Notes under the pieces: model-generated | Told to the model about the DNA's origin: nothing | Databases searched by the model: none | Seen by the model: the letters and a program-made list of their open reading frames with translations, nothing else | Position numbers and translations under genes: made by a program | IMG/VR virus record: IMGVR_UViG_3300042934_000980 | Coordinates: 156,496 to 220,495 of that record | Direction: 5' to 3' (one strand) | DNA length: 64,000 nucleotides | Shown here: in pieces, positions 5,946 to 23,998 of the stretch | Numbering within the stretch: the first letter of the stretch is position 1 | Layout: each line of letters starts with the position of its first letter

Positions 5946-6530
5946 ATGGCCTTTCCTAATCAGCAACTGTTTTTGGACAGGTTCATCGCTTATAACAAAA
6001 ACAGATATAAGGATGATCCTGAAATCGTTGAGGCGCTGAATGCCCTTCAGCTCGGCGCTGTCACCTTCCTCAATCCCCGTAAAGAGACCGTCGACGGGGT
6101 CACCCAGCACCTGACTGACCTGAACGTTCCAGGGGTGCTGACGGCGGTCAACCAACGTTTCATCCCAGCCGATTACCCCCTTCACGGTGTGGCTCAGCTT
6201 GTTTCTGAAAATCCACTGGTCATGGCTGACCTGCAACTGGAAATGGAAGCCGGGGTATATTGGTTGCGCACTGACGAGGACGGCAGCAAGGTCGGGGCCC
6301 TGTTGGTAGCACATGGTGAAAAGACCGAAGCCAACGTGCTCTCTTTGATCAAAGGCAAGTGCCTGTTTGATCTGCAAGACAGCGAAATCACGGTCAACGA
6401 CGACGTCACCCAAGTGGCGATCGACTCTCCGACGATCACCGGTCTTTTGGCCGTGGTGGAATCGCTGGGTGATATCACCGAGGCTGTCTACAACGGCGAC
6501 TTCGCTTTTGACGGCACCCTGACTTACTAA
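5946..6530 (+). CDS. putative virion protein, paralog of 20506..21099 and 21216..21785
   Basis: FLDRFIAYNKNRYKDD vs FVTRFVAFNLNRYKDD; start placed at MAFPN. Confidence 0.75.
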   Translation: MAFPNQQLFLDRFIAYNKNRYKDDPEIVEALNALQLGAVTFLNPRKETVDGVTQHLTDLNVPGVLTAVNQRFIPADYPLHGVAQLVSENPLVMADLQLEMEAGVYWLRTDEDGSKVGALLVAHGEKTEANVLSLIKGKCLFDLQDSEITVNDDVTQVAIDSPTITGLLAVVESLGDITEAVYNGDFAFDGTLTY

Positions 6531-6598: not shown

Positions 6599-9568
6599 AT
6601 GGCTGACACTGAAGTAACAGAATGGGTACAAGACGTACCCCTCATCGAAGTCGGTGAGAAGGTTAAGGGCGGCGTTGACGGCGCCGCTAACAAGAGCTCC
6701 AAAGAACTGATCAAACGCACCGACTACCTGTACGCCCAACTGCAAGCACTGGTGGTGGGTGGACTGAGTGTCCTCGGTAAGCTGGACAGTGAAGCAGAAC
6801 TGGACGCCATCGACACCACCGGGTTGGTCAAAGGCACCGCGTACTTTGTCAGCGGCTCCCTGCGAGTCTGGAACGGCGAAGAATGGACGGACTCCGGCTC
6901 TTTGCTCGGTCCTCGCGGCATCAACCTGCTCGGCACCTGGCCTGACGCCCAAGAGTTGCCAGCGATCGCTTCCAACGAAGTGGGTGACGCCTACATCTGG
7001 AAAGGCGACGTCAACATCCTGATCCCGGTGGGTGAAGGTGAAACGGCTACCCGTGAGTGGGCCAGCATCGGTCTTAAAGGCCCTCAAGGTGATTCGGCCT
7101 ACGAGCTCGCCCAAGACATCGACGGCTTCCAAGGCACCAAAGCCCAGTGGCTGGCCAGCTTGGTGGGTAAAAGCAACTACCAGATCTGGTTGGACCAAGG
7201 CAACACCGGCACCGAAGCCGACTTCTTGGCCACGCTCAAGTCAACTGAACCAGGCCCACCCGGTGAGTCGGTTAAAGGCGACCCAGGTGACCCTGCCACC
7301 CCGTTTGCGATTGAAGGCACGGTAGAGTCGGCGGATCAGCTCCCTACCCCGGGTGATGCGCGCAAAGCGTACTACATCGGCAGCCACCTGTTTGTCTGGG
7401 TTGAATCCCAGAGCAACTACGTGGACTTGGGTTCGGTAGGCGGTCTCTCTGCTTACGACCTGTGGAAGGCTGAAGGCAATACAGGCACCCTCGCTGACTT
7501 CTTCGAGGCGTACCGGTCGACAGTTCCGGGTCCAAAAGGTGACAACGGTGCCAACGTCAACGTCAAGGGTACCCTGAGCACTTCGGACAGCTTGGCGGCG
7601 TTGCAAGACCCGCAGAACCAAGACGCCTACGCGATGAGCGACACAGGTAACCTGTGGATCCTTATCGATGGGACTTGGACAGACACCGGCCCATGGCGTG
7701 GTAAGAGCAACTACGATCTCTACGTCGAGAACGGCGGTCAAGCCGATCAACCCACGTGGCTTGCCAGTCTGCAAGGCCGTGATGGGGAAGACGGGACCAA
7801 CATCCAGCTCAAGGGTATCGTTCCTTCCTACGAAAACCTGCCAACCAGTCCTGCCGAACAAGACGTGTACGCCGTACGCGACCTGAACAGCATCTTTGCC
7901 TTCATCAACGGCGGCTGGGACCTGATGGGTCAGTTCAAGGGTGAAGACGGTGAAGATGGCCAGAACGGCACCTCCATCAATGTCGTCAAGATCCTGACCG
8001 CGGATGACACCGCCATTCCAGCGGCTGCTGGTAACGCCGGCAAAGCCTACGTGGACCTCGACGGTCACATCTGGCTGTCCAACAACAGCATCTGGATCGA
8101 CGTTGGTCCTGTGGGTGCTGCAGGCCCTCAGGGTCCTCAAGGTACAGGCTTTAACCTGCGTGGTAACGTGGCCACTGCCGGTCAGCTGCCTAACACCGCC
8201 CAGGTGCAAGACGGCGATGCCTACATCACCACCATCGACAAGATGCTCTACGTGCGCGTGGAAGGTCAGTGGAACGGTCCGTTTGACATCATCGGTCCTG
8301 AAGGTCGTCAAGGTGTGCCAGGTCCTCAAGGTGCTGATGGTAAGTCCATCGCCATCATGGGTTCCTACACCACCGATGCCGACTTGAAAGCCGCTCACCC
8401 CACAGGCAACTTGGGTGAAGGCTACTTGGTGGGCACTCACCTGTGGATCTGGACGACTGCCGATGGCGGTAAGTGGATCGACGTGGGTGAAGTACGTGGT
8501 CCACAAGGGTTGCCAGGGCCTGAAGGTAAAGCCAGCACCAAACCCGGCCCTAAAGGTGAGCGTGGTACGGTGTGGATCACCTTGCCGGCCGGTCAAGATG
8601 AGCCTTCGCAAGGCTTTGCCGGTAACGTGGGTGACTGGGCGGTCTCGGACACCTTCAAGGTGTACTACCGCAGCGTCAACGGCTGGGTGTACTGGGGTCA
8701 ACTGGTAGCGGGTGATGTAAACTCGCCGCTGGAAAGCTTTGGCAAGGCTGTGCGTCTGGGTAACCAGTGGGTGGTGTTGCCGATCGATGAAGTGGAAGCA
8801 CCTCAAGACGGCAAGTTCTACGTTCGTCGTCTCAAAGCAGGCAGCAACCCTTTGGCTACGGAATGGGTCGCACTTAAGGAAGTGCCTGAAGAACTCACCG
8901 CCAAAGACGGTAAGCTCTACGGTCGGTTCTGGGATGCCGCCACCACCAAGTTCCTGTGGAAAGAAGTGGCTATCCCTTCCGGCATCGCCGATCTGGTCAC
9001 CAAAGACGGCAAGCAGTACGCCCGGGTGTTTGAATCGGGTGCGACCACGCCGATCTGGAAAGAGATCGTCACCATCGCCGACATCACGGCCAAGGACGGG
9101 AAGTACTACGCCCGCTTCTTTGCAGCCGACGGCACCGCCCCGATCTGGAAAGAAGTCCCTGTAGGGATCTCCGACCTGACCACTAAGGACGGTAAGCAGT
9201 ACGTTCGGGTCTATGAGGTGGCAGGTGCTGCACCGATCTGGAAAGAGTTTGTGCTGCCTACCATGGACAAGTACACACTCAAGATGTTGGCGGCCACCAC
9301 CATCCTCGACCTGAGCCAGGCACAGGTGTTCAGCATTGCCAATAGCTCGGCCCGCACGCTTGCGTTCATGGCCCAAACCCAACCGGCTGCTGACCGCTCG
9401 ATGACCGTGGTATTGATCATCAACGGTGCAGGTGTGATCACCTGGCCTGCCAACGTGGTCTGGACCGGCAGTACTCAACCGATCTTGGGGGCAACCACCA
9501 CCGTGGTGACCCTGTTGTGGGACGGCATTGGCGGTCGTTGGATCGGTAGCGTAGGCGCCAGCATCTAA
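6599..9568 (+). CDS. long tail fibre with collagen-like triplets and modular repeats
   Basis: 989 aa; GPQG/GPKG triplets, repeated LP..GDAY..LWVW..W.D.G and SAYELW..G..GT...WLASL modules, five DGKxYxR..W repeats. Confidence 0.85.
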   Translation: MADTEVTEWVQDVPLIEVGEKVKGGVDGAANKSSKELIKRTDYLYAQLQALVVGGLSVLGKLDSEAELDAIDTTGLVKGTAYFVSGSLRVWNGEEWTDSGSLLGPRGINLLGTWPDAQELPAIASNEVGDAYIWKGDVNILIPVGEGETATREWASIGLKGPQGDSAYELAQDIDGFQGTKAQWLASLVGKSNYQIWLDQGNTGTEADFLATLKSTEPGPPGESVKGDPGDPATPFAIEGTVESADQLPTPGDARKAYYIGSHLFVWVESQSNYVDLGSVGGLSAYDLWKAEGNTGTLADFFEAYRSTVPGPKGDNGANVNVKGTLSTSDSLAALQDPQNQDAYAMSDTGNLWILIDGTWTDTGPWRGKSNYDLYVENGGQADQPTWLASLQGRDGEDGTNIQLKGIVPSYENLPTSPAEQDVYAVRDLNSIFAFINGGWDLMGQFKGEDGEDGQNGTSINVVKILTADDTAIPAAAGNAGKAYVDLDGHIWLSNNSIWIDVGPVGAAGPQGPQGTGFNLRGNVATAGQLPNTAQVQDGDAYITTIDKMLYVRVEGQWNGPFDIIGPEGRQGVPGPQGADGKSIAIMGSYTTDADLKAAHPTGNLGEGYLVGTHLWIWTTADGGKWIDVGEVRGPQGLPGPEGKASTKPGPKGERGTVWITLPAGQDEPSQGFAGNVGDWAVSDTFKVYYRSVNGWVYWGQLVAGDVNSPLESFGKAVRLGNQWVVLPIDEVEAPQDGKFYVRRLKAGSNPLATEWVALKEVPEELTAKDGKLYGRFWDAATTKFLWKEVAIPSGIADLVTKDGKQYARVFESGATTPIWKEIVTIADITAKDGKYYARFFAADGTAPIWKEVPVGISDLTTKDGKQYVRVYEVAGAAPIWKEFVLPTMDKYTLKMLAATTILDLSQAQVFSIANSSARTLAFMAQTQPAADRSMTVVLIINGAGVITWPANVVWTGSTQPILGATTTVVTLLWDGIGGRWIGSVGASI

Positions 9569-9629: not shown

Positions 9630-10697
9630 ATGGCTGACGAAAACGTTGTGGATAACGACGAATTGGGTGAAGAGCCGTCCAAAGAAGAACTGGACGCCGC
9701 CCCTGATGCAAACGCTGAACCCGAGGCAGATAACACCGCCGCTGAAGAAGGCACGGATGAAACGGTTGAAGGTGACGTTGAGCCTGAAGCTGAATACTCC
9801 AACGCCGTGGCAGCTGAAGCTCCGGTTGCCAGCGCGGAACTGGGTGAAGGGGAATACCCTGACCACCAAGTCCCTGCGCCGGTATCGGACAGTCCTACCC
9901 AGGAAACCACCAACGAACCCCTGCCTGACGATCACGTAGACCAAGTGGCAACCACCACTGCGGTGACGGAAGAAGAAAGCGAGGAAGCGCCTGAACCTGA
10001 GGTGCCTCAGGAACGTGTGAACGCCTCAACCTTGCTGATCGAGCTGGAATCGGGCGGGTATCCGGTGACCCTAGGTGCGATCTTCTCCAAGTACTCGGAC
10101 CGTTCGTTCCCGCAGTCCCCGTTGTTGCATGATCTTGAAGCCTTGGGTTACGCCAAGGTAGAACCCACCCCTCGCCCTGAAGGCGCCGTCGTAACTGAAG
10201 GTAAGCCGGTGGAAGAGGACGGTGTGTGGAAACGGGTCTGGGTAGCACGGGACTGGAACGACGAAGAAAAGGCCACGCAGCTGGCGGCCCAGAAGGAGCA
10301 AGCGAACCAAAAGATTCTGCAGGTTCGCAATGACGACTTCGAGATGGGCTTGGAGTTCTCCTTCCAGGACACTTCGTTCCACGCCCAGTTGCGTGACGGC
10401 GACCGCATCAACCTGATGTTTCTCAATGACCAAGCCAAAGAACGTCTGGCCGCCGGCAGTGACGAAACCGAACCGTTCCGCAGCTACGAGAATATCAGCT
10501 ACGAACTGCCTCCACAGGAGTTGCTGGATCTCACGTACGCAGCGTTGGCAGCCTACAAGGCCATCCTGCGCAACAGCTGGGCCATCAAGGACCAAGTCGA
10601 CAGAGCCACCACAGTAGCCGAGTTGCCGGAAATCCCGGGTACGTTCCTGCCTTCAAGCAGTGCCCTGAAATTGGGCGCAAGCGAAGCAACTGAGTAA
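9630..10697 (+). CDS. tail-fibre assembly/chaperone-like protein (DUF4376-like C-terminus) with long acidic N-terminal extension
   Basis: directly after the fibre; VWKRVWVARD and FHAQLRDGDRINL motifs typical of fibre-associated proteins; first ~135 aa E/D/A/P-rich. Confidence 0.65.
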   Translation: MADENVVDNDELGEEPSKEELDAAPDANAEPEADNTAAEEGTDETVEGDVEPEAEYSNAVAAEAPVASAELGEGEYPDHQVPAPVSDSPTQETTNEPLPDDHVDQVATTTAVTEEESEEAPEPEVPQERVNASTLLIELESGGYPVTLGAIFSKYSDRSFPQSPLLHDLEALGYAKVEPTPRPEGAVVTEGKPVEEDGVWKRVWVARDWNDEEKATQLAAQKEQANQKILQVRNDDFEMGLEFSFQDTSFHAQLRDGDRINLMFLNDQAKERLAAGSDETEPFRSYENISYELPPQELLDLTYAALAAYKAILRNSWAIKDQVDRATTVAELPEIPGTFLPSSSALKLGASEATE

Positions 10698-10757
10698 CAC
10701 GCACGTAGGTGGCCTCCTCAGCTGAGGAGGTCGCTTACTCTTCAAAGGAATTAACCC

Positions 10758-11489
10758 ATGCTAGAAGCAATGCTGTTAGGTGCAAGACCTACCGTCATGC
10801 CAGCACCCATCTTTCTGTTTGATATGGCGACCCAAAAAGCCAGTGGTCCGAATGGGAATATCCCGGTCACCACCACTGTTGCCGGTGGGAGCGTTGTGGA
10901 CAACGCATACCTCATTAACGACAAACCGTCCATGAGCCTGCCTGCCGCCACCAGCAACTTGGTTATTAACATAACCACGCCACTGGATCTGACAAACGGA
11001 CCGCTGCCGAATGAATTCACCTTGGAATGGTCGTTCATTCACCACAGTGGGTTGGCGGCTGCACAGTATTACGGTAGCACGTACTTTCAAAACGGTGCCG
11101 GTAACCCGGGCGCAGCGATCTATTACGGTGATACCCCGTTCAACAACTCGTTGCTCTATTCGACAACACCGGGCACTGCATCCTCAACGTGCTGGGTGCT
11201 TACCGGGGCAACCAAAACGGCTCAGCTGGCACTTCTGATCCAAGCGGCCATCGTGGTAAGGGGAGGCTTGGTGTACTTCTACCGAAACGGCACCTTGCTG
11301 CGCGTTCAACGATACGGTGAGTGGATCGAGCAGGACGCCAGTGCCAACCAAGGTACTTGGAATGCTCTGAGTCGTATCACCTTGGGGTGGTTTAACTCTA
11401 CCTTGAAGAACGCCCCGAGTCACTACGGTAACATTCGTATTTCCAACTACGCCCGCTATACCCAGAACTACGTCCCCACACCGTTCTAA
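10758..11489 (+). CDS. LamG/concanavalin-A-like virion protein
   Basis: EFTLEW, AAIVVRGGLVYFYRNG and NIRISNYARYTQNYVP match the LamG-type pattern of phage structural proteins. Confidence 0.7.
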   Translation: MLEAMLLGARPTVMPAPIFLFDMATQKASGPNGNIPVTTTVAGGSVVDNAYLINDKPSMSLPAATSNLVINITTPLDLTNGPLPNEFTLEWSFIHHSGLAAAQYYGSTYFQNGAGNPGAAIYYGDTPFNNSLLYSTTPGTASSTCWVLTGATKTAQLALLIQAAIVVRGGLVYFYRNGTLLRVQRYGEWIEQDASANQGTWNALSRITLGWFNSTLKNAPSHYGNIRISNYARYTQNYVPTPF

Positions 11490-11542
11490 GGGATAAGAGT
11501 AATTAACGGGTCACATTCCACCCCTGAGCAGCAGGACAAACC

Positions 11543-12001
11543 ATGAGTGATTTTACTCGATTCAGTGCCATTGAGCGATTGGGGTACGACGTTGAATCCA
11601 GCCGTAAGTACGGTAAGGATATCTGGAGCGTAGCGCCTGGGTATCGTTACTACATCGGATTCAAAGGGTCTACACGTTACGTTGACGTGGAAGACGGCTT
11701 TCTGACTGACGGGGCTACTATCCCGCGTTTCCTGTGGTGGTTGTTGCCACCGTTGGGCGAATACAGTCAAGCAACCAGCTTGCACGATAAACTGTGCCGG
11801 TCGTATTACATCTTGGAACTCATCAACGGCGTTGAGACCCAAGTCCCTGTCACTCGTGCTGAGATCGACGCGATCCTCAAAGAAGCCCTGGAAGTGTTGG
11901 AGGTCAAGAAATGGAAAGAGACCTGTATCATGGCTGGGGTGAATGCGTACCGACTCTTTACCAACCCCACGGAGGCCCGAGGACTGGCTGACAGTTTATA
12001 A
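11543..12001 (+). CDS. DUF1353 family protein
   Basis: GFLTDGATIPRFLWWLLPPLGEYSQATSLHD signature. Confidence 0.85.
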   Translation: MSDFTRFSAIERLGYDVESSRKYGKDIWSVAPGYRYYIGFKGSTRYVDVEDGFLTDGATIPRFLWWLLPPLGEYSQATSLHDKLCRSYYILELINGVETQVPVTRAEIDAILKEALEVLEVKKWKETCIMAGVNAYRLFTNPTEARGLADSL

Positions 12002-12039
12002 TCGGGTCGCCATCCACCCTAACCCGCAAAGGTTAAGAC

Positions 12040-12501
12040 ATGGCTGATATCAAAGAGAAACCCGACGCGTTCCCATCCGTGCCGTTGATTCAACCTGGAT
12101 GGAAGATCAAAGGCGGTGCGGAGGATGCCGCTGCCAACCTTCAAGCGGTCGCGCTGACCCAGCGTACCGCCCACCTTAAGAAGCAGCAAGATGAAATCAA
12201 AAAGTTGCTACTGGGTGGGATAAAAATTATTGGTCGTCTGGTGAATGAAGATGCACTGGACACCATCGACACCTCCAAGCTTTCCATGGGAGACGGCTAC
12301 TTTGTAGACGGTGCAATATTCCTGTGGAACGGCAAAGAGTGGGTCAGTTCGGGCTCGCTTAAAGCGGACCCGGTTGATCTGGCTGAAGGGGTCAGCACTG
12401 ACCCTGGCAACATCCTCCGTTTAGGAGAAGATGGTAAGTTGTACGTGTCCTTTGACACTACACGGGATCTTCTTTCGATTTACAATGCCGCTAAGGAGTA
12501 A
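12040..12501 (+). CDS. short fibre adaptor, N-terminus paralogous to tail fibre 6599..9568
   Basis: VPLI..G.K.KGG...AAN....L..RT..L...G...YFV.G....WNG.EW..SGSL shared with the fibre; ends DLLSIYNAAKE. Confidence 0.75.
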   Translation: MADIKEKPDAFPSVPLIQPGWKIKGGAEDAAANLQAVALTQRTAHLKKQQDEIKKLLLGGIKIIGRLVNEDALDTIDTSKLSMGDGYFVDGAIFLWNGKEWVSSGSLKADPVDLAEGVSTDPGNILRLGEDGKLYVSFDTTRDLLSIYNAAKE

Positions 12502-12506
12502 GACGT

Positions 12507-13019
12507 ATGTCACTTGCACTTCAACTGGAAGACTTGGCCGAACAGCTGGGTAAAGATTACAAAACCCTGGTGGGGTCTCAAGGTGATCTGAGCACCCTGC
12601 CCACCGAAGCCAAAGACAACGTGGTCAATGCGATCGCCGAAATCTACAGCCTGCTGGCCGATGCCGGTATCCACATTGACGACACCGCAGGTGCCGGTCA
12701 AACAAACGTGGTGCTGTCCGCTGACAAAGTGGTGGCGCTGCTGGAAGAAGCCAAGAAGGCTGTCAAAGATGACTTGCTCTCAGGCGCAAGCGAAGCTTAT
12801 GACACCTTCAAAGAGCTGCAAGACCGCTTTGAAGCTGACGAAGAAGGCGCAGCTGCCGTCACAGCTGCCTTGGGTAAGCGTGTGCGGTTTGACGCTCCCC
12901 AAACGTTGACTGCTGAAGAGCAGACCACCGCTCGTAACAACATCGGTGCGGTAGCCGCCGCTGACATCGGCGACACCGAAGTTGACTTGGTAGCCATCTA
13001 CAACGCCGCCAAGGCTTAA
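12507..13019 (+). CDS. putative fibre/decoration subunit
   Basis: L..LPT.AKDNVVNAIAEI and Q.LTAEEQTTARNNIGA motifs; ends DLVAIYNAAKA. Confidence 0.75.
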   Translation: MSLALQLEDLAEQLGKDYKTLVGSQGDLSTLPTEAKDNVVNAIAEIYSLLADAGIHIDDTAGAGQTNVVLSADKVVALLEEAKKAVKDDLLSGASEAYDTFKELQDRFEADEEGAAAVTAALGKRVRFDAPQTLTAEEQTTARNNIGAVAAADIGDTEVDLVAIYNAAKA

Positions 13020-13077
13020 GCGCTAGGAGCAAGGGCCGTGTGCGGTTTGGCACGGCCTCTTTTAAAAGGAGTAGTGT

Positions 13078-14154
13078 ATGGACCTTGTGGCGAGGGTTGT
13101 TGCGTTTGTTAAAACTGCCGCCGCGGATTTTAAATCGTTGTCTTCAGCGGTTTCATCCAAGGTAGATAAAGTCGAGGGCAAAGGACTCTCTACGGAGGAT
13201 TACACCACCACCGATAAAGGCAAGGTTGCCTCGTTAGGCGACTTGGGTGGTCAGAACTTGTTTTACAACTCAGCCATGCGGTTGAGTACCATCCCAGGCT
13301 TGGCAGACGGCTGGAAGATTGACGTACCCGGAAGCCCCGGTGCCTCAACAGTAACCTTCTCTCTGGTTCCGTCTCCTATGAACTTGGGAGAGAATGCACA
13401 GCGGCTGACTGTCGCGGGGTTGAACACCAGCACCTTGTACCGCTCGTTGATCAATGACCCTTCCTACCAACCCCCTAGGGTGTGCGAGGGGATGAACATC
13501 ACCGTCTCCACGCATGTGAAAGGCACGGCTGGACTGGGTCTTCGGATCTACGTGCAGGCCCTCAGTGCAGCAGGAGCGGTCTTGGGTACGGTTAACAGTG
13601 CGTTGTCGGCATTGGACGGTACGGTGCAACGGTTTTCCAAGTCGTACAACAACCTGCCGGTGGGTACAACGCGCATTCAGGTGGTGTATCGGATTTATGG
13701 CGGGACGACGGTCACAGCGGGGGTGGTGGACTTTACCCGTCCTCAGTTGCAGATTGGGTTGCTCTCTAGCTGGACTGAGGACACCCTCAGCCACATGACC
13801 GGTTGGATCACGTTGCCCTTGCTCAGCGGGTTCAGTGCGGTAGCCAGCCATCCCCCTCAGTACCGCATCGTCAATGATGAAGTGAAGCTTCGTGGTAAAG
13901 TGACCATGGGGGCTAAAGTGCTGTCTGGCGGTTCTTACCCGTTCGCCACGTTACCTGCTGGGTATCGCCCTGCGGGGATGACCACCGACAGTGAAGTGAT
14001 GATGGTCCCTGTGGTGTGCTCCTCCAGCGTCGGTACAGCGTGTCACTGTTCGGTTACCCGCACGGGGACTTGTTCCATTGTGCTGGGTGGTTCGTTGTCT
14101 TTGGCCTCTTCCACCTACGACCTGTCCAACGTTAGCTTCTCAACGACGGCATAA
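13078..14154 (+). CDS. putative receptor-binding fibre-tip protein
   Basis: KVDKVEGKGLSTEDYTT fibre motif, central carbohydrate-binding-like domain, C-terminal PQYRIVNDEVKLRG..FATLPAGYRP tip domain. Confidence 0.7.
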   Translation: MDLVARVVAFVKTAAADFKSLSSAVSSKVDKVEGKGLSTEDYTTTDKGKVASLGDLGGQNLFYNSAMRLSTIPGLADGWKIDVPGSPGASTVTFSLVPSPMNLGENAQRLTVAGLNTSTLYRSLINDPSYQPPRVCEGMNITVSTHVKGTAGLGLRIYVQALSAAGAVLGTVNSALSALDGTVQRFSKSYNNLPVGTTRIQVVYRIYGGTTVTAGVVDFTRPQLQIGLLSSWTEDTLSHMTGWITLPLLSGFSAVASHPPQYRIVNDEVKLRGKVTMGAKVLSGGSYPFATLPAGYRPAGMTTDSEVMMVPVVCSSSVGTACHCSVTRTGTCSIVLGGSLSLASSTYDLSNVSFSTTA

Positions 14155-17444: not shown

Positions 17445-18065
17445 TTAAAACTCAACCGGCACCCGGACCTTGGTCAGGATCCCGATGGTGTTGAGTAAAG
17501 GCGTGCTGATCCCCATGTACTGGGTATCCTGCCCATGGCGACTGGGGTAGGTGACACTGATATAGCCCGGTGGGGTGTGGTCGCAGACTTCCAAGCTCAG
17601 CGAACAGGGTTTGCCGTCTATCATGCCGTTGATCACTTTGCGGTATTCCCCGTACCGCTCGTAATCCAAGGCAAAGATGAAGAACCTCGCCAGAGCGCGG
17701 AAGAGCTGCGAAGACTTGGGTTGGCGGTCAAACACCAGATGCTCGTACAAAAGCCGCCAGCCCTCTTCATAGCCCCTTACAGCACCCTCTGCGGTGTAGA
17801 TATAACGCTTACCGTTACAGTGCCAGTAGTAACGCGTCTGCGCCTCATCGCTGATGGTGATCAGCATGTCATCATTCAGATGCGTTACCGAGTAGAACTT
17901 CACCGCGCCCTTAAGCGCGTGGCGAATGCGCATGATCTTTTTGGCGTTACGGCGCTGCGGCATAGCCGAGGTAGGGCAACCCGTCACACTGTCCACATTT
18001 AACTGGGTGCCCACATTGCCGTAGTCAGGGAAGACCCCAACGTGCGAATAGGTTTTCTTAAGCAT
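17445..18065 (-). CDS. hypothetical protein
   Basis: 206 aa, GGAGG SD. Confidence 0.75.
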   Translation of the reverse strand: MLKKTYSHVGVFPDYGNVGTQLNVDSVTGCPTSAMPQRRNAKKIMRIRHALKGAVKFYSVTHLNDDMLITISDEAQTRYYWHCNGKRYIYTAEGAVRGYEEGWRLLYEHLVFDRQPKSSQLFRALARFFIFALDYERYGEYRKVINGMIDGKPCSLSLEVCDHTPPGYISVTYPSRHGQDTQYMGISTPLLNTIGILTKVRVPVEF

Positions 18066-18079
18066 AGCCCCTCCGAGGG

Positions 18080-19432
18080 TTACTTGATAATATCGAGCAC
18101 CGGTTGCTTAAGCTCGGTGCTGTCCAGCTCACGTTGGATCGGGTTACAGAACCCGTCACTGGTGGCCACGATCAGTTCTTTGTCGGTCTGAAACAGGTAG
18201 ATGTCAGCATCTTTAAGGATCATGATGCCTTTCTCCCCCATCCCGGCTTTATTCTGCCAGTAGGTTTTATTGCCTTTAAGCCCGACCACGGTGATCTTGT
18301 CGCCGTTGACGTTCATGACCGTGTCGACCAGCACCTTGTTCTCATCAACTAAGCGAAACCCAAACAAGGTTTTGTAAGGATAACTGAAGGTTCGCTTACC
18401 GCTGATGGTCAAGTTGCCTTTGGACACTTTACAGCTGCGCTCATCGGTGTAACGCCCGGTGGTAATGCTGGACATCACATACAGATAAGCCCCGTACACC
18501 AAACCGCCGATGATCACCGCAAACAACAACCGCCACAGCACACCGGCTATCAAGCGGTTACGCTTAAGACGCTTGTTCTCTTTACGGGTTTCCAGCAACA
18601 TCCGAGCCAACGAGCCTTTGTCGTGCCAGTCATCGTCACAGGCCAGGTTCAGGCGTTCGTCGTGTTCCGGTTCCAGCTGGCGGAACTTGCTGGGCGTGTG
18701 CAAGTCCATCCAGATGCCCGGTGGTGACAGCACCCACATGCTGTCGCGCCAAGCATAGGCGTCATACATGTCAAGGGTGTTGGGATCTGGAAGTTCTTTG
18801 TCGTTAGGCCAAGGACCCAAGACGCGCAAACCAGGAAGTGCGGAATTGGATTGTTCAGGGGCGGTGGGGTTGACGGTTTCACGGGTAGCCGCCTTCAGCA
18901 ACCCATTAAGCACCCCGTTCTTCTTCTCCCACTCTTCGCGTGTCCCTTCAAACCCAGAGTCCTGTGCCCGCTCCCACAGCTGGCATTCAACGCTTGGCAC
19001 AGGACTGCCCAAACGAACAGTCCAACCTTGTTTGGTTTTGCTTTGCAGTTCGCCGCGCCACAGCATTCCTGCACCCAATGGAATGGTATCATCCTCAGGC
19101 AGCTCTTCTTCGGTAGGCCATACCCCCAAGTACTTGTCAGGTATGGTCACCCAACCATGGGTAGTCAGAATTTCCTGGCCTTCACCAGTTTCAACGATTT
19201 GACCGACAACCGAGTGGTAGGTGGTCAAGTCACCTTTAAGTGTCCAGTAAGGGGTAAGAAGCCCTGCAATAGATTGCAGCTCAACCACCCACAACTCATT
19301 ACCCGCTACAGCAGCCGCGCCAATTTCACACACTTTTGCGTCGGGTAAAGGCTCGCCCGGTTCGAGAAAAAGTGACACCTCCCAAGAACTGTCCCCGATG
19401 GTAATGGTCTTTAACTTCTCTTTGTCAACCAT
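18080..19432 (-). CDS. membrane-anchored protein with tail-fibre-like repeats
   Basis: LGVWPTEEELP, LRVLGPWPNDKELP..DAYAWR and LWERAQDSGFEGTREEW match modules of fibre 6599..9568; basic run then one TM helix; start placed at MVDKE. Confidence 0.75.
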   Translation of the reverse strand: MVDKEKLKTITIGDSSWEVSLFLEPGEPLPDAKVCEIGAAAVAGNELWVVELQSIAGLLTPYWTLKGDLTTYHSVVGQIVETGEGQEILTTHGWVTIPDKYLGVWPTEEELPEDDTIPLGAGMLWRGELQSKTKQGWTVRLGSPVPSVECQLWERAQDSGFEGTREEWEKKNGVLNGLLKAATRETVNPTAPEQSNSALPGLRVLGPWPNDKELPDPNTLDMYDAYAWRDSMWVLSPPGIWMDLHTPSKFRQLEPEHDERLNLACDDDWHDKGSLARMLLETRKENKRLKRNRLIAGVLWRLLFAVIIGGLVYGAYLYVMSSITTGRYTDERSCKVSKGNLTISGKRTFSYPYKTLFGFRLVDENKVLVDTVMNVNGDKITVVGLKGNKTYWQNKAGMGEKGIMILKDADIYLFQTDKELIVATSDGFCNPIQRELDSTELKQPVLDIIK

Positions 19433-19467
19433 AGTGTAATTTGTCCTTAAACAAAAAGAAAGCAACC

Positions 19468-19504
19468 CCAATACGCCATTAGGGGTTACCTAATGGCGTA
19501 TTGG
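19468..19504 (-). terminator. terminator hairpin
   Basis: 16-bp stem CCAATACGCCATTAGG/CCTAATGGCGTATTGG, T-rich tail on minus strand. Confidence 0.8.
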
Positions 19505-19510
19505 AAGTTG

Positions 19511-20080
19511 TTAGTGGAGAGACTCTAACCGAGTCAAATGGAAGGGGACCATCGTCGTGGTCTTGTCCTTCAGGTTGGCAAATACCAACACACCAAATTC
19601 AGGGTGCGGGGTGTGCCGGTTCAACGTCATCTGCATCGGGATGGAATCCATCACAAACATTACACTTTCCCGGCGCAGATGTTTCATCAGCAACGCAATG
19701 TTGCCCAGGTACCCGTGGTCGAAGAACTCTTGGATCGACGCCATGGTTTCCGGACCGACACTGCAGCCCCACTGGGTTTTGTCGTGCGAGCGACTGGCAA
19801 AGTCGTTGAAGACGTTCACAGCCTGACTGCCAGTCTTGGCAACATCGGGGCTGTTAAGCAGGCGGTCCTTGGGGAAGTTGTTGGTTTTGATCATCTCGTC
19901 CAGATGGTCAACAGCGTAGACAAATTCTTCCAGAACGGTTTCTTGCAAGGGCGTTTGTTTGAACTCTCGTACAAGTTCAGGGTTCAAGGTGCGGGTAACT
20001 TCCTCGAACGTTAATACCGGTTCTGCTTCAAGTACGAGTGGGTTCAATGCATCGCCAACCTCCGCGAGTAGTGCATTCAT
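19511..20080 (-). CDS. hypothetical (early) protein
   Basis: 189 aa; TATATTAC about 100 nt upstream. Confidence 0.8.
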   Translation of the reverse strand: MNALLAEVGDALNPLVLEAEPVLTFEEVTRTLNPELVREFKQTPLQETVLEEFVYAVDHLDEMIKTNNFPKDRLLNSPDVAKTGSQAVNVFNDFASRSHDKTQWGCSVGPETMASIQEFFDHGYLGNIALLMKHLRRESVMFVMDSIPMQMTLNRHTPHPEFGVLVFANLKDKTTTMVPFHLTRLESLH

Positions 20081-20178
20081 GGTACGTGTATCCTGTTATA
20101 AGAGCGGTGGAGTTGCTATAAGTACATGTTTGAGTTATTTAAAGTTAGAAGGTCTAGAAGAGGTCTTGACACAGTGTA

Positions 20179-20186
20179 GTAATATA
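20179..20186 (-). promoter_or_regulatory. early promoter core TATATTAC
   Basis: exact motif, intergenic. Confidence 0.7.
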
Positions 20187-20231
20187 GGTTTCAGATTGGC
20201 CAAGACCTCCCCTTATTAGGACGTCTTTACC

Positions 20232-20414
20232 TTAACGCATGATCCCTGCATACCCTACATACGCCAACGACACACCTACCACCATGACTGCGGTAATCAA
20301 CAGGTTCTTCCAACGACGTTTGCGGATCTGGACCTCCAGTACATCTGCCATGGCGATCTGGTCCAGTGAGGACATGTCGTATTTTGGGAGGTGACTATGA
20401 GTACGATCGGACAT
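20232..20414 (-). CDS. small protein with C-terminal TM helix
   Basis: 60 aa from MSDRT; RKRRWK then hydrophobic helix. Confidence 0.6.
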   Translation of the reverse strand: MSDRTHSHLPKYDMSSLDQIAMADVLEVQIRKRRWKNLLITAVMVVGVSLAYVGYAGIMR

Positions 20415-20505
20415 TGTTATTCTCCTAAATTTCCTAAATGCGGAATAATGGCAGAACGGAAGAGCGCCCGAAGGCACTCCTCCTTTCTAGCTAACCCTGA
20501 TGGGA

Positions 20506-21099
20506 TCAGACGGCTGGTTCTTCTGGGAAGGTCAGTTGACCATAATCGGTATCAGGGATGGTGAACACCTCAGCTTGCGCCACGGCGTGAACAACGCTAC
20601 CCCAGATGCACGGGGCGTCGATCGACACAGTGGTGGCGTCTGCGGTGACTTCTTGATCCAGCGTGTCGTACTTGAGCGCTGTGGCAAACGCAGCTTTGGC
20701 AGCAGCAGGACGGTCAGCTTCGGCTGTGCCGTGCGGCAGCAAGATTGCGATCTTGGTGGTGGTCCCGTCTTCGTCCAGGAACGCGTAGGTGCCGGGTACT
20801 ACCAGCGCCTTGACCGCGTCAAAGTCTTCGTAGACGGTAGCATCCGTCATGTCGTAACCGCGGGCGCTGTTGGGGTTTGCAGCGGTCCAAGATTGCTCCA
20901 GACCGATAAAGCGACGCGCTGCCGACTTTACGGTAGCCGAACGCAGACCATTGGCACCTGACGTGATGTCTTCGAAGGAGAGTTCTGCTTCAGTCAAACC
21001 GTCGAACAACGCTTTCTTCTCAGCATCGTCTTTATAACGATTCAGGTTGAAAGCCACGAAACGGGTGACGAACAGACTCATCCGGGAGGATTTAGCCAT
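20506..21099 (-). CDS. putative virion protein (paralog family with 5946 and 21216)
   Basis: 197 aa, alignable over most of its length; TATG late-type motif upstream. Confidence 0.75.
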   Translation of the reverse strand: MAKSSRMSLFVTRFVAFNLNRYKDDAEKKALFDGLTEAELSFEDITSGANGLRSATVKSAARRFIGLEQSWTAANPNSARGYDMTDATVYEDFDAVKALVVPGTYAFLDEDGTTTKIAILLPHGTAEADRPAAAKAAFATALKYDTLDQEVTADATTVSIDAPCIWGSVVHAVAQAEVFTIPDTDYGQLTFPEEPAV

Positions 21100-21215: not shown

Positions 21216-21785
21216 TTAGCCGTTGAGGTCCATCGGCTCACCTGGCTGCAGTTCAGCTACAGGCGCCTTGGCGACCACGTAGTCGACTTCACCGTAGATG
21301 GTGTCGCCTTCCACGATGATGGTGCCATCGGTCGCGGTGATCTGGTCAGCCGGGATGTCGTACTTGAGCGCGTCGATCAGCACGGCAGTGGCGGCGTCGG
21401 CTTGCTGGGCTTCAGCGGTGCCTTCGGCGATGACCACAACGGCCTTGGCGTCAGCGCCTTCGCCGACCAGGTACACACCAGGCTCTTGCTTGGCTTGTGC
21501 CGCGTCCGTGTCAGCCAGTGTCTCGCTGTCGGTCAGGGTCAGGACTTTGGGGCTGTTGACATTGGCCGACTTCCAGGTCTGATCAGGCCCGGTAAAGTTG
21601 CGACCTTGCGAGTCGATGTTGGCGGTGCGCACGCCATCGGCTTGGTGCTGGATGTTGGTGATCTGCAGATCTTCCAGGGTCAGGCCTTCGAAGCTCTTCA
21701 GCATTTCCTTGTCGGCTTTGTACAGCTGCTGGTTCTTCTGAACGAAAGGCCCCAGCAGAAGGCTTAGGGGCGATTGCTTGCTCAT
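21216..21785 (-). CDS. putative virion protein (paralog family with 5946 and 20506)
   Basis: 189 aa; ALKYD and GTAEA motifs shared with 20506. Confidence 0.75.
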   Translation of the reverse strand: MSKQSPLSLLLGPFVQKNQQLYKADKEMLKSFEGLTLEDLQITNIQHQADGVRTANIDSQGRNFTGPDQTWKSANVNSPKVLTLTDSETLADTDAAQAKQEPGVYLVGEGADAKAVVVIAEGTAEAQQADAATAVLIDALKYDIPADQITATDGTIIVEGDTIYGEVDYVVAKAPVAELQPGEPMDLNG

Positions 21786-22119: not shown

Positions 22120-23841
22120 TTAGTGCGTCTTGACCGCGTGCAGCTTGTCGCCCAACAGCAGGCTGCTGGCATTGGCCAAGATCTTGGCTGTTTGCAGGCC
22201 GCCCTTAAGCGCTGTGACCAACGCGAACGCAGTGTCGTACACACCCAGGTCTTGAGCTTGTCCCGTTTCACCGGTGGCCAAGTTGGTGATGTCCGGTACA
22301 TTACCTGCGTACTTTTTGAGCAGCTCTGGCAGGTCAGGTATGTACGCACCCTCGTCGCTTTGCTTGGCCAGATGCACGTACGGCACGCACACCAGCTCGG
22401 CTAGGCGTTCGAGGATCTTTGCATCCGTCTTGTCCCGGGCGAAGGTCACCGGATACAGGCTTTCCTTATTCTTGGGGGCAAGGACCACATGGTCTTGGTG
22501 ATGGCAGTGATCATAAAGATCCGACAACACCAACAATCCAGCCTTCATCAACGAGGTACCGGCGCCTGGCAGAATGCCGTTGTCCAACGCACTCTTGACC
22601 GCCTTGACGACGTCCTCGAACCGATCCAAACGCTCCTTCACGTCCGAATAGGTTTCACCGCCCACAAAGATGGTGACCAACTGGCCGCGCAGGTTACGGA
22701 TCCGGCTTTCGTTGAACTTGGCGCGTACGCTGAAACGGTCACCCATTTCGTACCCGCTCAGTTCTTGCTCGATGGCATCAGCACGCTGCTGCACGCGCAC
22801 TAAGGCATTAGCATCCAGCTCGCTCACCAACGAGCGGCTGTTGCCGACCGTGACGTGCATGTTCGGAACGTTGAACTCCGCACCCACCGCGTCTTGCAGC
22901 TGAGTGAACATCGGCACGCCAAAGATGGTGGCGATATCACCCATGATCAAGCTGCCCACCGAACCACCGGCGTTGGTGTTGATCCCCACGAAAGTTGGGC
23001 CGCCCAGGAAGGTGTTGACCATTCCACCCATGCGTGCACTGGATTTTACTTGGTTATTGATGTTGGCCATGACAGCCCCCACCTCATGCTCGATCGAGCG
23101 GGCAATGATAAGGATGTGGTCGGTCTGGCCCTTGAACTGGTCATGCAGCTTGATCAGCTCATCGGTCAGGTCCGCACCACGCCCCAGCGTACCGTCGATC
23201 ACCACCGGGATGAAGTTTTCCAGCAAAGTGTCGGCACCGTTGCCGTACTTGCTAAAGCCTGGGTTACTGAAACTCATGTTCAGTGGCAGGCCGTTGCTGT
23301 GCACCACCTTGTCTTCGCTGCTCTGGCCTTCCTTGAGCTCGATGGCAGGGTAACGATCACCCGACTGCTTGTAGATGTCGGTGATGATGGTCGACAGCTC
23401 GTGGTCGCTGTTGGAGGAGGTCAGGGCCAGCTTGAACAACCGATCGTCTTCCGGGGTAACCTGGATGGCGAGGCTGCGCAGCTTCTTGCCGATCTCACCG
23501 ATCACTTGCTCGATGAAACGCTGTTCACGAAAGCTCTTGAACTGGCTGAGCACGCTGTACAGTTCAGCGGTCAACATGACGGTGGTGGTGGTGCCATCGC
23601 CACACTCGTGGTCGGTCTTGATCGCCGCTTCAACGATCACCCGGTTAATGACCTCATCACGCGGGTCATCGAACTTGATGGACTTGGCGACCGTCACGCC
23701 ATCCTTGGTGACCTTAACCGAGGTGCCGGTGCCGATCAAAGCGAGTTTGCCATTGGGACCCATGGTGGCCACAACTGCTTGGTGTACCTTGGTCATGACG
23801 TCTTTGACCATGTCCTGGGTGTTATCCAAAGTCAGCAGCAT
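22120..23841 (-). CDS. groEL: GroEL-like phage chaperonin (EL gp146 type)
   Basis: TMGPNG, VTKDGVTVAKSI, GDGTTT, VGGETYSDVKERLDRFEDVVKAVKSALDNGILPG; no GGM tail; no GroES gene adjacent. Confidence 0.95.
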   Translation of the reverse strand: MLLTLDNTQDMVKDVMTKVHQAVVATMGPNGKLALIGTGTSVKVTKDGVTVAKSIKFDDPRDEVINRVIVEAAIKTDHECGDGTTTTVMLTAELYSVLSQFKSFREQRFIEQVIGEIGKKLRSLAIQVTPEDDRLFKLALTSSNSDHELSTIITDIYKQSGDRYPAIELKEGQSSEDKVVHSNGLPLNMSFSNPGFSKYGNGADTLLENFIPVVIDGTLGRGADLTDELIKLHDQFKGQTDHILIIARSIEHEVGAVMANINNQVKSSARMGGMVNTFLGGPTFVGINTNAGGSVGSLIMGDIATIFGVPMFTQLQDAVGAEFNVPNMHVTVGNSRSLVSELDANALVRVQQRADAIEQELSGYEMGDRFSVRAKFNESRIRNLRGQLVTIFVGGETYSDVKERLDRFEDVVKAVKSALDNGILPGAGTSLMKAGLLVLSDLYDHCHHQDHVVLAPKNKESLYPVTFARDKTDAKILERLAELVCVPYVHLAKQSDEGAYIPDLPELLKKYAGNVPDITNLATGETGQAQDLGVYDTAFALVTALKGGLQTAKILANASSLLLGDKLHAVKTH

Positions 23842-23895
23842 TTACGTGTTCTCCGTACAAGTTTAAAAAGTTAATGGTTGCTGTGCTACGGGTAA

Positions 23896-23903
23896 GTAAT
23901 ATA
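23896..23903 (-). promoter_or_regulatory. early promoter core TATATTAC
   Basis: exact motif about 55 nt upstream of chaperonin. Confidence 0.7.
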
Positions 23904-23998
23904 GGTTTCAGATTTGCTTACAAAAAACAAAATGGCGGCATAGAGGTTAGGGACCTCCCCTCAAGCCTGTTGGCCCGACTAAAGGGGAGGGTGTTGCT

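What the first reader, a model, noticed from the sequence alone, without database searches (positions are those of the whole stretch)
18080..19432. Membrane-anchored protein displaying tail-fibre repeat modules on the cytoplasmic side
Seen: its N-terminal 260 aa contain copies of the fibre's modules. LGVWPTEEELP and GLRVLGPWPNDKELPDPNTLDMYDAYAWRDSMWVL match the fibre's GINLLGTWPDAQELPAIASNEVGDAYIWKGDVNIL, and QLWERAQDSGFEGTREEW matches AYELAQDIDGFQGTKAQW. The collagen triplets are absent. A basic run (RKENKRLKRNR), one TM helix and a two-Cys C-terminal domain follow. The gene lies in a non-structural minus-strand operon 9 kb from the fibre. Inference: topology is N-in/C-out. It could be a membrane platform that templates or sequesters fibre assembly, a decoy for host sensors of fibre proteins, or a two-sided superinfection sensor. 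I do not know of a described precedent.
Basis: partly seen in the sequence, partly recalled or inferred. Interest (0 to 1): 0.75.

Follow-up and report, generated by a model that had tools for sequence, protein, structure and literature searches.

The report
Phage membrane protein with tail-fibre modules
An EL-like giant phage encodes a single-pass inner-membrane protein from an undescribed but widespread family, and its cytoplasmic tail has been extended with bead modules otherwise found in the phage's tail fibre; the resemblance is real and old, its function is unknown, and the gene looks early-expressed, not part of fibre assembly.

Summary
The 450-aa product of 18080..19432(-) carries two 'WP' bead modules (aa 101-137, 201-244) and one helical module (aa 146-172). 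All three match the fibre 6599..9568 better than every shuffle, and profile-profile comparison gives E 4.7e-9. A basic run, one TM helix (aa 294-320) and a C-terminal domain with two invariant Cys follow, so N-in/C-out is well supported.

The conserved part is the other end of the protein. A juxtamembrane helix, the TM helix and a roughly 110-aa beta-sandwich define a family of at least 210 clusters, including EL ORF149, Noxifer gp308 and Bacillus phage AgentSmith gp148. Most members are about 175 aa with a tail of about 40 aa. There is no Pfam or PHROG family and no convincing fold relative.

Fibre modules occur in only about 10 of 150 representatives, all in one clade. They copy one N-proximal bead shared by the fibres of this phage, EL (ORF156) and phiKZ (gp146). 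They are no closer to this phage's own fibre, so the graft is old.

The gene is second in a conserved operon (early-type promoter, gene, strong hairpin, this gene), and the fibre cluster has no such promoter.

Best reading, at low confidence: an early envelope-directed transmembrane adaptor involved in superinfection or lysis-timing control. The nearest precedent is the phiKZ holin gp142 with its regulator gp143.

The parts
18080..19432 (-). CDS of the membrane protein (450 aa, ATG start, stop included)
   Evidence: ORF list; translation and hydropathy; identical protein on a 220,554-bp contig
19022..19132 (-). WP-type fibre bead module 1 (aa 101-137)
   Evidence: Family-own module HMM 47.9 bits; Smith-Waterman against the fibre beats 1000 of 1000 shuffles; beta strands in the model
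18917..18997 (-). Helical B-like fibre module (aa 146-172)
   Evidence: Aligns to fibre aa 167-184; score 48 against a shuffle maximum of 46; part of the collinear BLASTP match; helices at 148-171 in the model
18701..18832 (-). WP-type fibre bead module 2 (aa 201-244)
   Evidence: BLASTP E 1e-5; fibre HMM with 0 of 2000 shuffles reaching it; phrog_3904 tail fibre E 1.3e-4; hhalign E 4.7e-9; pLDDT 90-95
18554..18631 (-). Conserved cytoplasmic juxtamembrane helix with basic run (aa 268-293; D271 and A276 nearly invariant)
   Evidence: Family alignment; continuous helix 272-322 in the model; 7 K/R in the last 15 aa
18473..18553 (-). Single transmembrane helix (aa 294-320)
   Evidence: Kyte-Doolittle maximum 2.36; the only hydrophobic segment; present in nearly all family members
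18137..18466 (-). Periplasmic beta-sandwich domain (aa 323-432) with invariant Cys334, Arg347 and Cys429
   Evidence: Profile search finds 210 clusters; invariant columns; domain model pLDDT 90.5; no convincing fold match
19466..19506 (-). Strong hairpin followed by a U-tract between the upstream gene and this gene (terminator or attenuator)
   Evidence: Scan; fold energy -34.5 kcal/mol, z -6.7; equivalent hairpins with different stem sequences in EL, L002 and L003
20178..20197 (-). Early-class promoter motif AATCTGAAACCTATATTACT heading the operon
   Evidence: identical 20-mer upstream of GroEL; same motif upstream of the orthologous gene in L002, L003 and EL; consensus in PMC7058600; class assignment from PMC7598289
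19511..20080 (-). Conserved upstream partner gene (189 aa, EL ORF148 orthologue)
   Evidence: BLASTP to EL ORF148 and to the L002 and L003 neighbours, E 1e-27 to 4e-68
17445..18065 (-). Conserved downstream partner gene (206 aa, EL ORF150 orthologue)
   Evidence: BLASTP to the L002 and L003 neighbours and to EL ORF150, E 5e-65 to 3e-8; phrog_29031
6917..7033 (+). The fibre's WP bead (fibre aa 107-145), the module type copied in the membrane protein
   Evidence: Every module-bearing relative that matches this fibre matches this bead best; the same bead occurs at the same place in EL ORF156 and phiKZ gp146
7088..7168 (+). The fibre's first helical B module (fibre aa 164-190)

Best explanation
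What it is (shown): a bitopic inner-membrane protein, N-in/C-out, of an undescribed jumbo-phage family. The family core is a conserved cytoplasmic juxtamembrane helix, one TM helix and a periplasmic beta-sandwich of about 110 aa with two invariant Cys, probably forming a disulfide. In one clade of EL-like phages the short cytoplasmic tail was extended with 1-5 copies of a roughly 40-aa 'WP' beta-bead. This protein has two beads and one helical B module. In gp146/ORF156-type tail fibres the WP bead occurs once, near the baseplate-proximal end.

How it most likely works (inferred): it is made from an early-class operon and acts as a transmembrane adaptor. The conserved outer domain engages an envelope ligand or event. 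The conserved juxtamembrane helix passes that state across the membrane. The grafted bead array supplies cytoplasmic protein contacts, either self-association or binding whatever partner recognises the fibre's WP bead.

The most likely role is an early envelope-directed one: control of superinfection, or a lysis-timing signal of the T4 RI / phiKZ gp142-gp143 kind. Building the fibre is unlikely.
For: Module homology.

Topology: 7 K/R before the TM helix against 1 after it, and two invariant Cys outside.

Family core and variable tail:
- 210 clusters; typical length about 175 aa; TM helix and 2 Cys in nearly all members.
- Homologues in EL, Noxifer, Lu11, DT01 and Bacillus phage AgentSmith.
- Modules in 10-11 of 150 representatives, all inside one 32-member clade supported 96/90.

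Age of the graft: the modules match the same bead of three fibres equally well.

Early-class operon, conserved in four phages: promoter motif upstream of the preceding gene, then a strong hairpin, then this gene. The motif identity comes from PMC7058600. PMC7598289 states that such conserved motifs proved to be early virion-RNAP promoters in every phage profiled. There is no such motif in the fibre cluster.

Precedent for a bitopic N-in protein whose cytoplasmic domain talks to a virion-fibre-family protein: PMC12894885 and preprint 10.64898/2026.04.21.720040.
Against: - No function has been shown for any member of the family.
- The early class is inferred from a motif. EL-like phages have not been transcript-profiled here, and the hairpin could block read-through.
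- No ligand of the outer domain is known, and fold searches gave nothing above noise (best Z 6.1-6.5).
- UniProt labels the Noxifer member 'virion structural protein' while NCBI says hypothetical. If the UniProt label is right, that points elsewhere.
- phiKZ lacks the family, at least in the phage-collection searches, so it is not a core function of nucleus-forming phages.
Confidence: 0.4

Rival explanations
1. It is a class III-type holin or antiholin. The TM helix forms or gates membrane holes, the periplasmic domain and cytoplasmic beads are regulatory, and the beads couple lysis timing to the supply of fibre or baseplate parts.
For: - Same gross topology as T4 gpt and phiKZ gp142 (N-in, one TMD, C-out), with two conserved periplasmic Cys (PMC12894885).
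- The phiKZ holin's cytoplasmic domain binds gp143, a member of the virion DUF7941 family (PMC12894885; preprint 10.64898/2026.04.21.720040).
- The EL endolysin gp188 has no membrane-protein neighbour, so EL's holin is unassigned.
- A second small tail-anchored membrane ORF lies in the same region (20232..20477).
Against: - The early-class promoter motif argues against a late function.
- Noxifer carries this family as well as gp142/gp143-type lysis proteins, which the phiKZ paper used for modelling (PMC12894885).
- No sequence similarity to phiKZ gp141-144.
- No Pfam holin family matches.
- The outer domain is all-beta, and no solved structure, holin or otherwise, matched convincingly.
Confidence: 0.15
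2. One reading: a membrane platform that templates, nucleates or sequesters tail-fibre assembly through homotypic contacts between its beads and the fibre's WP bead.
For: - The beads are of exactly the type found at the conserved N-proximal position of the fibre, and they are kept across a clade.
- Paralogues of the fibre-adjacent gene 5895..6530 lie just upstream, at 20506..21099 and 21216..21785.
- A GroEL-like chaperonin is nearby.
Against: - EL has the same fibre bead but a module-free family member.
- Most family members lack modules.
- The modules are no closer to the phage's own fibre than to foreign fibres, so there is no sign of co-evolution.
- The fibre next to the module-bearing relative in locus L002 has no such beads, although only part of that genome was seen.
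- The early-type operon contrasts with a fibre cluster that has no early motif.
- There are no collagen triplets for co-trimerisation.
Confidence: 0.1
3. It is a decoy or anti-defence protein. The membrane-tethered fibre-like beads soak up a host immune sensor that recognises fibre proteins, early in infection.
For: Early-class operon; a hypervariable cytoplasmic extension across the family, of the kind seen in arms-race proteins; the beads mimic a conserved fibre epitope.
Against: No known sensor of this bead. The conserved part of the family is periplasmic, which a cytoplasmic decoy does not need. The family also occurs in a Bacillus phage.
Confidence: 0.07
4. It is a virion or ejected protein. 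The protein travels with the particle, for example in the peripheral baseplate, and inserts into the host membrane at infection, with the beads being true fibre-like virion parts.
For: UniProt calls the Noxifer member 'virion structural protein'. The neighbours belong to a family with 'virion structural protein' PHROG relatives.
Against: NCBI calls the same Noxifer protein hypothetical. phiKZ holin gp142 also carries the 'virion structural protein' label, which shows how unreliable that label is. The early-type operon also argues against it, and a type II membrane anchor with a disulfide domain suits insertion from the producing cell's cytoplasm.
Confidence: 0.07
5. It is a neutral domain-shuffling relic. 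The fibre fragments were fused by chance to a membrane protein and have no function of their own.
For: Modules are absent from most of the family and from the close relative P0004. The N-terminus evolves faster than the C-domain.
Against: The key bead residues (W-P, L-P, D-A-x-x-W-R, W-V, W) are invariant among P0001-P0003. Recognisable beads persist in lineages whose C-domains are only about 37-51% identical, and copy number has expanded up to five.
Confidence: 0.05

Closest known systems
Pseudomonas phage EL ORF149 (CAG27243.1, hypothetical protein) and its homologues in Noxifer (gp308), Lu11, pPa_SNUABM_DT01 and Bacillus phage AgentSmith (gp148)
   Same: The juxtamembrane helix, TM helix and two-Cys outer domain are homologous (35% identity over 120 aa to EL, E 2e-20). 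The operon context in EL is the same: GroEL nearby, then promoter, ORF148, hairpin, ORF149, ORF150.
   Different: Their cytoplasmic tails are unrelated to fibre modules, and most family members have only about 40 aa there. None has a described function.
phiKZ class III(B) holin gp142 with its cytoplasmic regulator gp143 (PMC12894885)
   Same: A jumbo-phage N-in/C-out single-pass protein with a sizeable cytoplasmic N-domain that serves regulation. Its partner gp143 belongs to a virion fibre-associated family (DUF7941). This gives a precedent for a membrane protein wired to fibre-type proteins on the cytoplasmic side.
   Different: No sequence similarity. gp142 has a tiny periplasmic tail, whereas here the periplasmic domain is the conserved part. 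In phiKZ the fibre-family element acts in trans; here it is fused in cis. The phiKZ genes lie in a lysis cassette, while this gene lies in an early-type operon. The local paralogue family shows no homology to gp143.
T4 holin gpt (class IIIA) and antiholin RI
   Same: Large virulent phage; a short cytoplasmic N-tail in typical family members, one TMD, and a globular periplasmic domain with a Cys pair. RI is an early-expressed periplasmic sensor of superinfection. (Established knowledge of T4 lysis inhibition, as summarised in PMC12894885.)
   Different: No Pfam match, and no solved structure of any kind matched the outer domain convincingly. The outer domain here is all-beta.
gp146/ORF156-type tail fibres of phiKZ-like and EL-like phages (phrog_3904)
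   Same: It shares the WP bead (38-43% identity over about 35-40 aa) and one helical B module, in the same order as in the fibre. Foldseek places the N-terminal region with tail fibres and collagen-like proteins.
   Different: It has no collagen triplets, no N-terminal attachment region (aa 20-68 not significant), no distal receptor-binding part, and a membrane anchor that no fibre has.

Membership tests
EL ORF149-like bitopic membrane protein family (undescribed; defined here) | Single TM helix preceded by a basic juxtamembrane helix with a conserved D-x-G-x-x-A-R motif | tested here: met
   D271 and A276 are at least 90% conserved, and a TM helix is present in nearly all of 150 representatives
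EL ORF149-like bitopic membrane protein family (undescribed; defined here) | C-terminal domain of about 110 aa with two invariant Cys and an invariant Arg | tested here: met
   C334, R347 and C429 are invariant in 104 sequences and in 80 sequences; profile E-values down to 1e-75 outside the immediate relatives
gp146/ORF156-type tail fibre (phrog_3904) | WP or A bead modules | tested here: met
   Two copies
gp146/ORF156-type tail fibre (phrog_3904) | Collagen-like G-X-Y runs between the beads | tested here: not met
   None in the 450-aa sequence
gp146/ORF156-type tail fibre (phrog_3904) | Full-length collinearity, including the N-terminal attachment region and the distal C-terminal domain | tested here: not met
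   The PHROG match covers only aa 201-238; aa 20-68 is not significant; the C-terminus is a different, membrane-anchored domain
T4 gpt holin (class IIIA) | N-in, one TMD, C-out with a large periplasmic domain | tested here: met
   By prediction only: charge bias, a single hydrophobic segment and outer Cys pair
T4 gpt holin (class IIIA) | Sequence or fold homology to gpt | tested here: not met
   No Pfam family at E up to 1. No PDB match with Foldseek E at or below 0.001, and best VIA Z of 6.1 is to an unrelated Ig-like DUF3244
T4 gpt holin (class IIIA) | Timed lethal hole formation, triggerable by an uncoupler | not testable with these tools
   Needs expression assays
phiKZ gp142 holin (class IIIB) | Sequence homology to gp142 and an adjacent gp143-type regulator, spanins and endolysin | tested here: not met
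   BLASTP of gp139-144 against the window and the family found nothing below E 0.1. hhalign of the local paralogues against gp143 gave probability 0.07%. No endolysin or spanin was seen among the neighbours
i-spanin (Rz-like) | Type II anchor with a coiled-coil periplasmic domain and a downstream or overlapping outer-membrane lipoprotein gene | tested here: not met
   The outer domain is a beta-sandwich. The downstream product has no signal peptide (sequence). The family also occurs in a Gram-positive phage

The most novel reading that the evidence does not exclude
The protein is a two-sided checkpoint. An early-made transmembrane device reads an envelope event through its conserved periplasmic domain, for instance a superinfecting particle or envelope damage. 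Through cytoplasmic beads that mimic the baseplate-proximal bead of the tail fibre, it captures or releases fibre or baseplate-binding factors. This would link envelope state to virion completion or lysis timing, as a cis-fused counterpart of the phiKZ gp142-gp143 pair.
Probability: 0.12. Interest if true: 0.85.

Novelty: new variant of a known kind. Interest (0 to 1): 0.55.

Why it matters
Jumbo phages of the phiKZ/EL type are being developed as therapeutic agents and studied for their unusual cell biology, yet their membrane proteins are almost unknown. This work defines a widespread single-pass membrane protein family that no database describes: at least 210 sequence clusters, from Pseudomonas and Bacillus phages and many metagenomes. 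Its periplasmic fold has no relatives.

It also shows that one lineage grafted tail-fibre beads onto the cytoplasmic side. Together with the recent finding that the phiKZ holin is regulated by a fibre-family protein, this raises a testable idea: giant phages may connect envelope events to virion parts across the inner membrane.

If the family turns out to control superinfection or lysis timing, it would give a handle on high-multiplicity lysis delay and pseudolysogeny-like behaviour in these phages.

Tried and rejected
1. Chance similarity. Rejected by shuffles, HMMs and profile-profile comparison.
2. Recent copy of, or concerted evolution with, the phage's own fibre. Rejected: identity is equal or higher to the EL and phiKZ fibres, and the fibre next to the relative in L002 has no beads.
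3. Known families for the whole protein and for ten other long-tailed members. Pfam and PHROGs gave nothing except the bead hit to phrog_3904.
4. Fold relatives of the outer domain. The whole-protein model and a separate domain model (pLDDT 90.5) were searched against PDB (Foldseek and VIA-wide) and AFDB clusters; BFVD and the ESM Atlas were searched with the whole-protein model only. Only noise-level Ig-like and long-hairpin matches appeared, plus the family's own Noxifer member and tail fibres for the N-terminus.
5. Homology to the phiKZ lysis cassette gp141-144. None.
6. Homology of the neighbouring paralogue family (phrog_18233) to phiKZ gp143/DUF7941. None by hhalign or Pfam.
7. Solved structures related to the fibre by sequence. 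None.
8. A search with the N-terminal 265 aa alone found only the closest relative.
9. The sigma-70 promoter scan is uninformative for this phage type.
10. Conserved neighbours beyond the EL-like group. None detectable by BLASTP.
11. Literature on EL gp149 or on virion proteomics of Noxifer. Nothing usable was found in the held library.
Full report
**The gene.** The ORF at 18080..19432 on the minus strand encodes 450 aa. The alternative TTG start at 19471 lies inside the stem of an 18-bp hairpin that precedes the gene. The ATG at 19432, 14 nt downstream of an AAGGA, is therefore the start. An identical protein is on record on a 220,554-bp contig. The window is part of a jumbo phage related to Pseudomonas phage EL:
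- A GroEL-type chaperonin (22120..23841, phrog_5725, E 7e-119) lies upstream, as in EL.
- The three-gene block 19511..20080, this gene and 17445..18065 is orthologous to EL ORF148-149-150 and to two metagenomic loci.

**Checking the observation.**
- BLASTP against the 989-aa fibre (6599..9568) gives two independent matches at E 1e-5. Residues 201-239 align to fibre 107-145, and residues 102-168 align collinearly to fibre 111-184.
- Each of the three quoted pieces was aligned by Smith-Waterman to the whole fibre and compared with 1000 shuffles of itself. All three exceed every shuffle: 84 against a maximum of 56, 63 against 57, and 48 against 46.
- An HMM built only from the fibre's nine bead modules finds residues 204-244, with 0 of 2000 shuffled N-termini reaching that score.
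- Among 420 six-frame ORFs of the window, that HMM finds only the fibre, a small fibre-cluster ORF (12040..12498) and this gene.
- A profile of three relatives' N-termini against a profile of three fibres gives 96% probability, E 4.7e-9.
- PHROGs sees the same stretch as tail fibre family phrog_3904.
- Foldseek against viral models puts the N-terminal region with tail fibres and collagen-like proteins.
- The helical module is the weakest piece. It fails against a small four-copy HMM (28 of 2000 shuffles) but passes the direct test and lies collinear with the bead before it.
- Residues 20-68 show no significant fibre similarity.
- The sequence contains no collagen triplets.

**Topology.** There is one hydrophobic segment, aa 294-320. 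Seven K/R fall in the 15 residues before it and one in the 15 after it. The N-terminal domain is acidic, has 290 residues and has no signal peptide. The C-terminal domain has two Cys that are invariant in 104 family members. N-in/C-out is therefore a sound inference, although it has not been tested experimentally.

**What the protein really belongs to.** The conserved part is not the fibre-like end.
- tblastn and a profile search of 1.8 billion representatives find 210 clusters. These share a juxtamembrane helix (D271 and A276 nearly invariant), the TM helix and a domain of about 110 aa with invariant C334, R347 and C429.
- Named members are EL ORF149, Noxifer gp308 and AgentSmith gp148, with further matches in Lu11 and pPa_SNUABM_DT01. 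AgentSmith infects Bacillus, so the family is not tied to a Gram-negative envelope.
- The typical member is about 175 aa with a cytoplasmic tail of about 40 aa. Tails range up to about 590 aa and are mostly unrelated to one another.
- No Pfam or PHROG family covers the core.
- AlphaFold models it with high confidence: pLDDT above 95 in the full model and 90.5 for the domain alone. After the membrane helix it forms a long beta-hairpin leading into a beta-sandwich.
- Searches of PDB, AFDB clusters, BFVD and the ESM Atlas return nothing above background. The best Z of 6.1-6.5 is to an Ig-like DUF3244 protein, below the stated noise level.

**Where the fibre modules came from.**
- A module HMM built from the family itself (consensus ILGVWPDEKELPEPETFKPGDAFIWRGELWVVTHNGKWV) finds 25 copies in 11 of 150 representatives and none in shuffles. 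There are one to five copies per protein and two in this one.
- All module-bearing members that were put in a tree of the outer domain fall within one 32-member clade (support 96/90). Four to five gains or losses are needed, so the modules are an old feature of that clade that has been lost or degraded several times.
- The window's fibre is the orthologue of EL ORF156 and phiKZ gp146. All three carry one 'WP' bead at the same N-proximal position: aa 107-145, 122-158 and 139-172.
- Every module-bearing relative with a significant match to the window's fibre matches that bead best.
- This protein's bead is 38% identical to its own fibre's bead, 43% to EL's and 41% to phiKZ's.
- So the modules are an ancient derivative of a particular, conserved, baseplate-proximal fibre bead. 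They are not a recent copy, and there is no sign of co-evolution with the resident fibre.
- EL has the bead in its fibre but none in ORF149.

**Expression context.**
- An identical 20-mer, AATCTGAAACCTATATTACT, lies upstream of 19511..20080 (at 20197..20178) and upstream of GroEL (at 23914..23895).
- A relaxed form of the motif occurs seven times in the window against 1.25 expected. All copies are on the minus strand, and the copies at 1198, 5823, 20182, 23899, 27667, 39736 and 50266 each lie just upstream of a minus-strand ORF. None lies in the plus-strand fibre cluster.
- It matches the published EL promoter consensus WTTTYAAACCTACATTATY and contains the phiKZ element TATATTAC (PMC7058600).
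- The review PMC7598289 states that such bioinformatically conserved motifs proved to be early, virion-RNA-polymerase promoters in every jumbo phage profiled, and that middle and late promoters cannot be found this way.
- The same motif precedes the orthologous upstream gene in L002, L003 and EL.
- Between that gene and this one, all four phages have a strong hairpin followed by a U-tract. Fold energies are -32 to -43 kcal/mol, z-scores are -4.6 to -6.7, and the stem sequences differ.
- The gene is therefore probably early and attenuated relative to its upstream neighbour. This is inference and needs transcript data.

**Mechanism.** Three observations point to a core activity at or beyond the membrane, with the bead array as a lineage-specific cytoplasmic add-on: the conserved outer domain with its conserved juxtamembrane helix, the highly variable cytoplasmic tail, and the early-type operon.
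- The nearest functional precedents are T4's early periplasmic superinfection sensor RI working on holin gpt, and the recently described phiKZ class III holin gp142. The cytoplasmic domain of gp142 is bound by gp143 (PMC12894885). A Goslar structural study assigns gp143 to the virion 'fibre cloud' family DUF7941 (preprint 10.64898/2026.04.21.720040).
- That pair shows that giant phages do connect a bitopic membrane protein to a fibre-family protein on the cytoplasmic side. Here the fibre-type element is fused in cis.
- I therefore favour an early envelope-directed transmembrane adaptor (superinfection control or a lysis-timing signal), in which the beads mediate self-association or capture of a partner that also recognises the fibre's WP bead. 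Confidence is about 0.4 for the package. It is much higher for the anatomy and evolution, and low for the role.

**Rivals.**
- A true holin or antiholin remains possible. EL's endolysin gp188 has no membrane neighbour. Against it are the early motif, the co-occurrence with gp142/gp143-type proteins in Noxifer, and the lack of any similarity to gp141-144 or gpt.
- The fibre-assembly platform is weakened by EL (bead in the fibre, none in ORF149), by the rarity of modules in the family, by the absence of co-evolution and by the timing.
- The decoy and virion-protein readings cannot be excluded. UniProt's 'virion structural protein' label for the Noxifer member is contradicted by NCBI's 'hypothetical protein'. 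The same label sits on the phiKZ holin, so it carries little weight.
- A neutral relic is unlikely, because the key bead residues are invariant among close relatives and copy number has expanded.

**Novelty and score.** The family, its outer fold and the fusion with fibre beads are undescribed as far as the libraries and papers searched here show. The general kind, a phage bitopic membrane protein with a regulatory cytoplasmic domain, is known. I rate it a new variant of a known kind with interest 0.55. A specialist would be moderately surprised by the fusion, and the family offers a concrete entry point into envelope control in giant phages. No function is established.

Noticed in passing
window 22120..23841 (-): A 573-aa GroEL-type chaperonin (phrog_5725, E 7e-119). 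It is syntenic with EL gp146 and preceded by the same early-type 20-mer promoter motif (23914..23895).
   Followed up: partly
window 5895..6530 (+), 20506..21099 (-), 21216..21785 (-), 28219..29505 (-): A paralogous family (phrog_18233 / N-terminal part of phrog_21620 'virion structural protein'). One copy sits directly upstream of the fibre and two lie between GroEL and the membrane-protein operon. EL ORF147 is a member. No detectable homology to phiKZ gp143/DUF7941 by hhalign.
   Followed up: partly
window 19466..19506 (-); L001 about 3380..3425; L002 about 9921..9970; L003 about 830..878: A strong hairpin with a U-tract between the ORF148-like gene and the membrane-protein gene, conserved in four phages with different stem sequences (-32 to -43 kcal/mol). 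Probably a terminator or attenuator that sets the expression ratio of the two genes.
   Followed up: partly
window motif copies on the minus strand at 1198, 5823, 20182, 23899, 27667, 39736, 50266: Seven copies of the EL/phiKZ-type promoter motif (TTYNRRACCTRYAT with up to one mismatch; 1.25 expected). All are on the minus strand and the copies at these positions each lie just upstream of a minus-strand ORF. None lies in the plus-strand fibre cluster. They give a map of presumed early operons.
   Followed up: partly
window 20232..20477 (-): A small ORF (81 aa from GTG, about 60 aa from an internal ATG) with a basic run and a C-terminal TM helix. This looks like a tail-anchored N-in membrane protein and resembles the phiKZ class IIIB holin in outline only. 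L002 has a 57-aa ORF at the same place.
   Followed up: no
window 6599..9568 (+); L010 4698..7838 (EL ORF156); L009 13646.. (phiKZ gp146): The fibre is the orthologue of EL ORF156, which is annotated only as a hypothetical protein, and of phiKZ gp146. It has nine bead modules, four helical modules and short collagen runs, and then four to five KDGK-Y-R-type repeats near aa 760-880.
   Followed up: partly
window 9630..14154 (+): The rest of the fibre cluster: a 355-aa acidic protein (phrog_4998), a tail-fibre assembly chaperone (11543..12001, phrog_1158), a 153-aa ORF with a fibre N-terminus and one bead (12040..12498), and further fibre-like ORFs (12507..13019, 13078..14154).
   Followed up: no
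window 53845..63959 (-): Three very large proteins in tandem (956, 1246 and 1186 aa). The two largest are paralogues (phrog_3573 plus N-terminal phrog_2163 'virion structural protein'), and their annotated reading frames overlap (60399..60511).
   Followed up: no
window 46386..48386 (-), 50283..52865 (-): An NAD-dependent DNA ligase (phrog_3869, E 2e-154) and an SbcC-like nuclease subunit (phrog_77). A DNA ligase also lies near the family member in Noxifer.
   Followed up: no
L011 17020..19182 (EL ORF187-189): The EL endolysin gp188 has no transmembrane neighbour, so EL-like phages do not show the phiKZ-type lysis cassette at that place. Their holin and spanins remain unassigned.
   Followed up: partly
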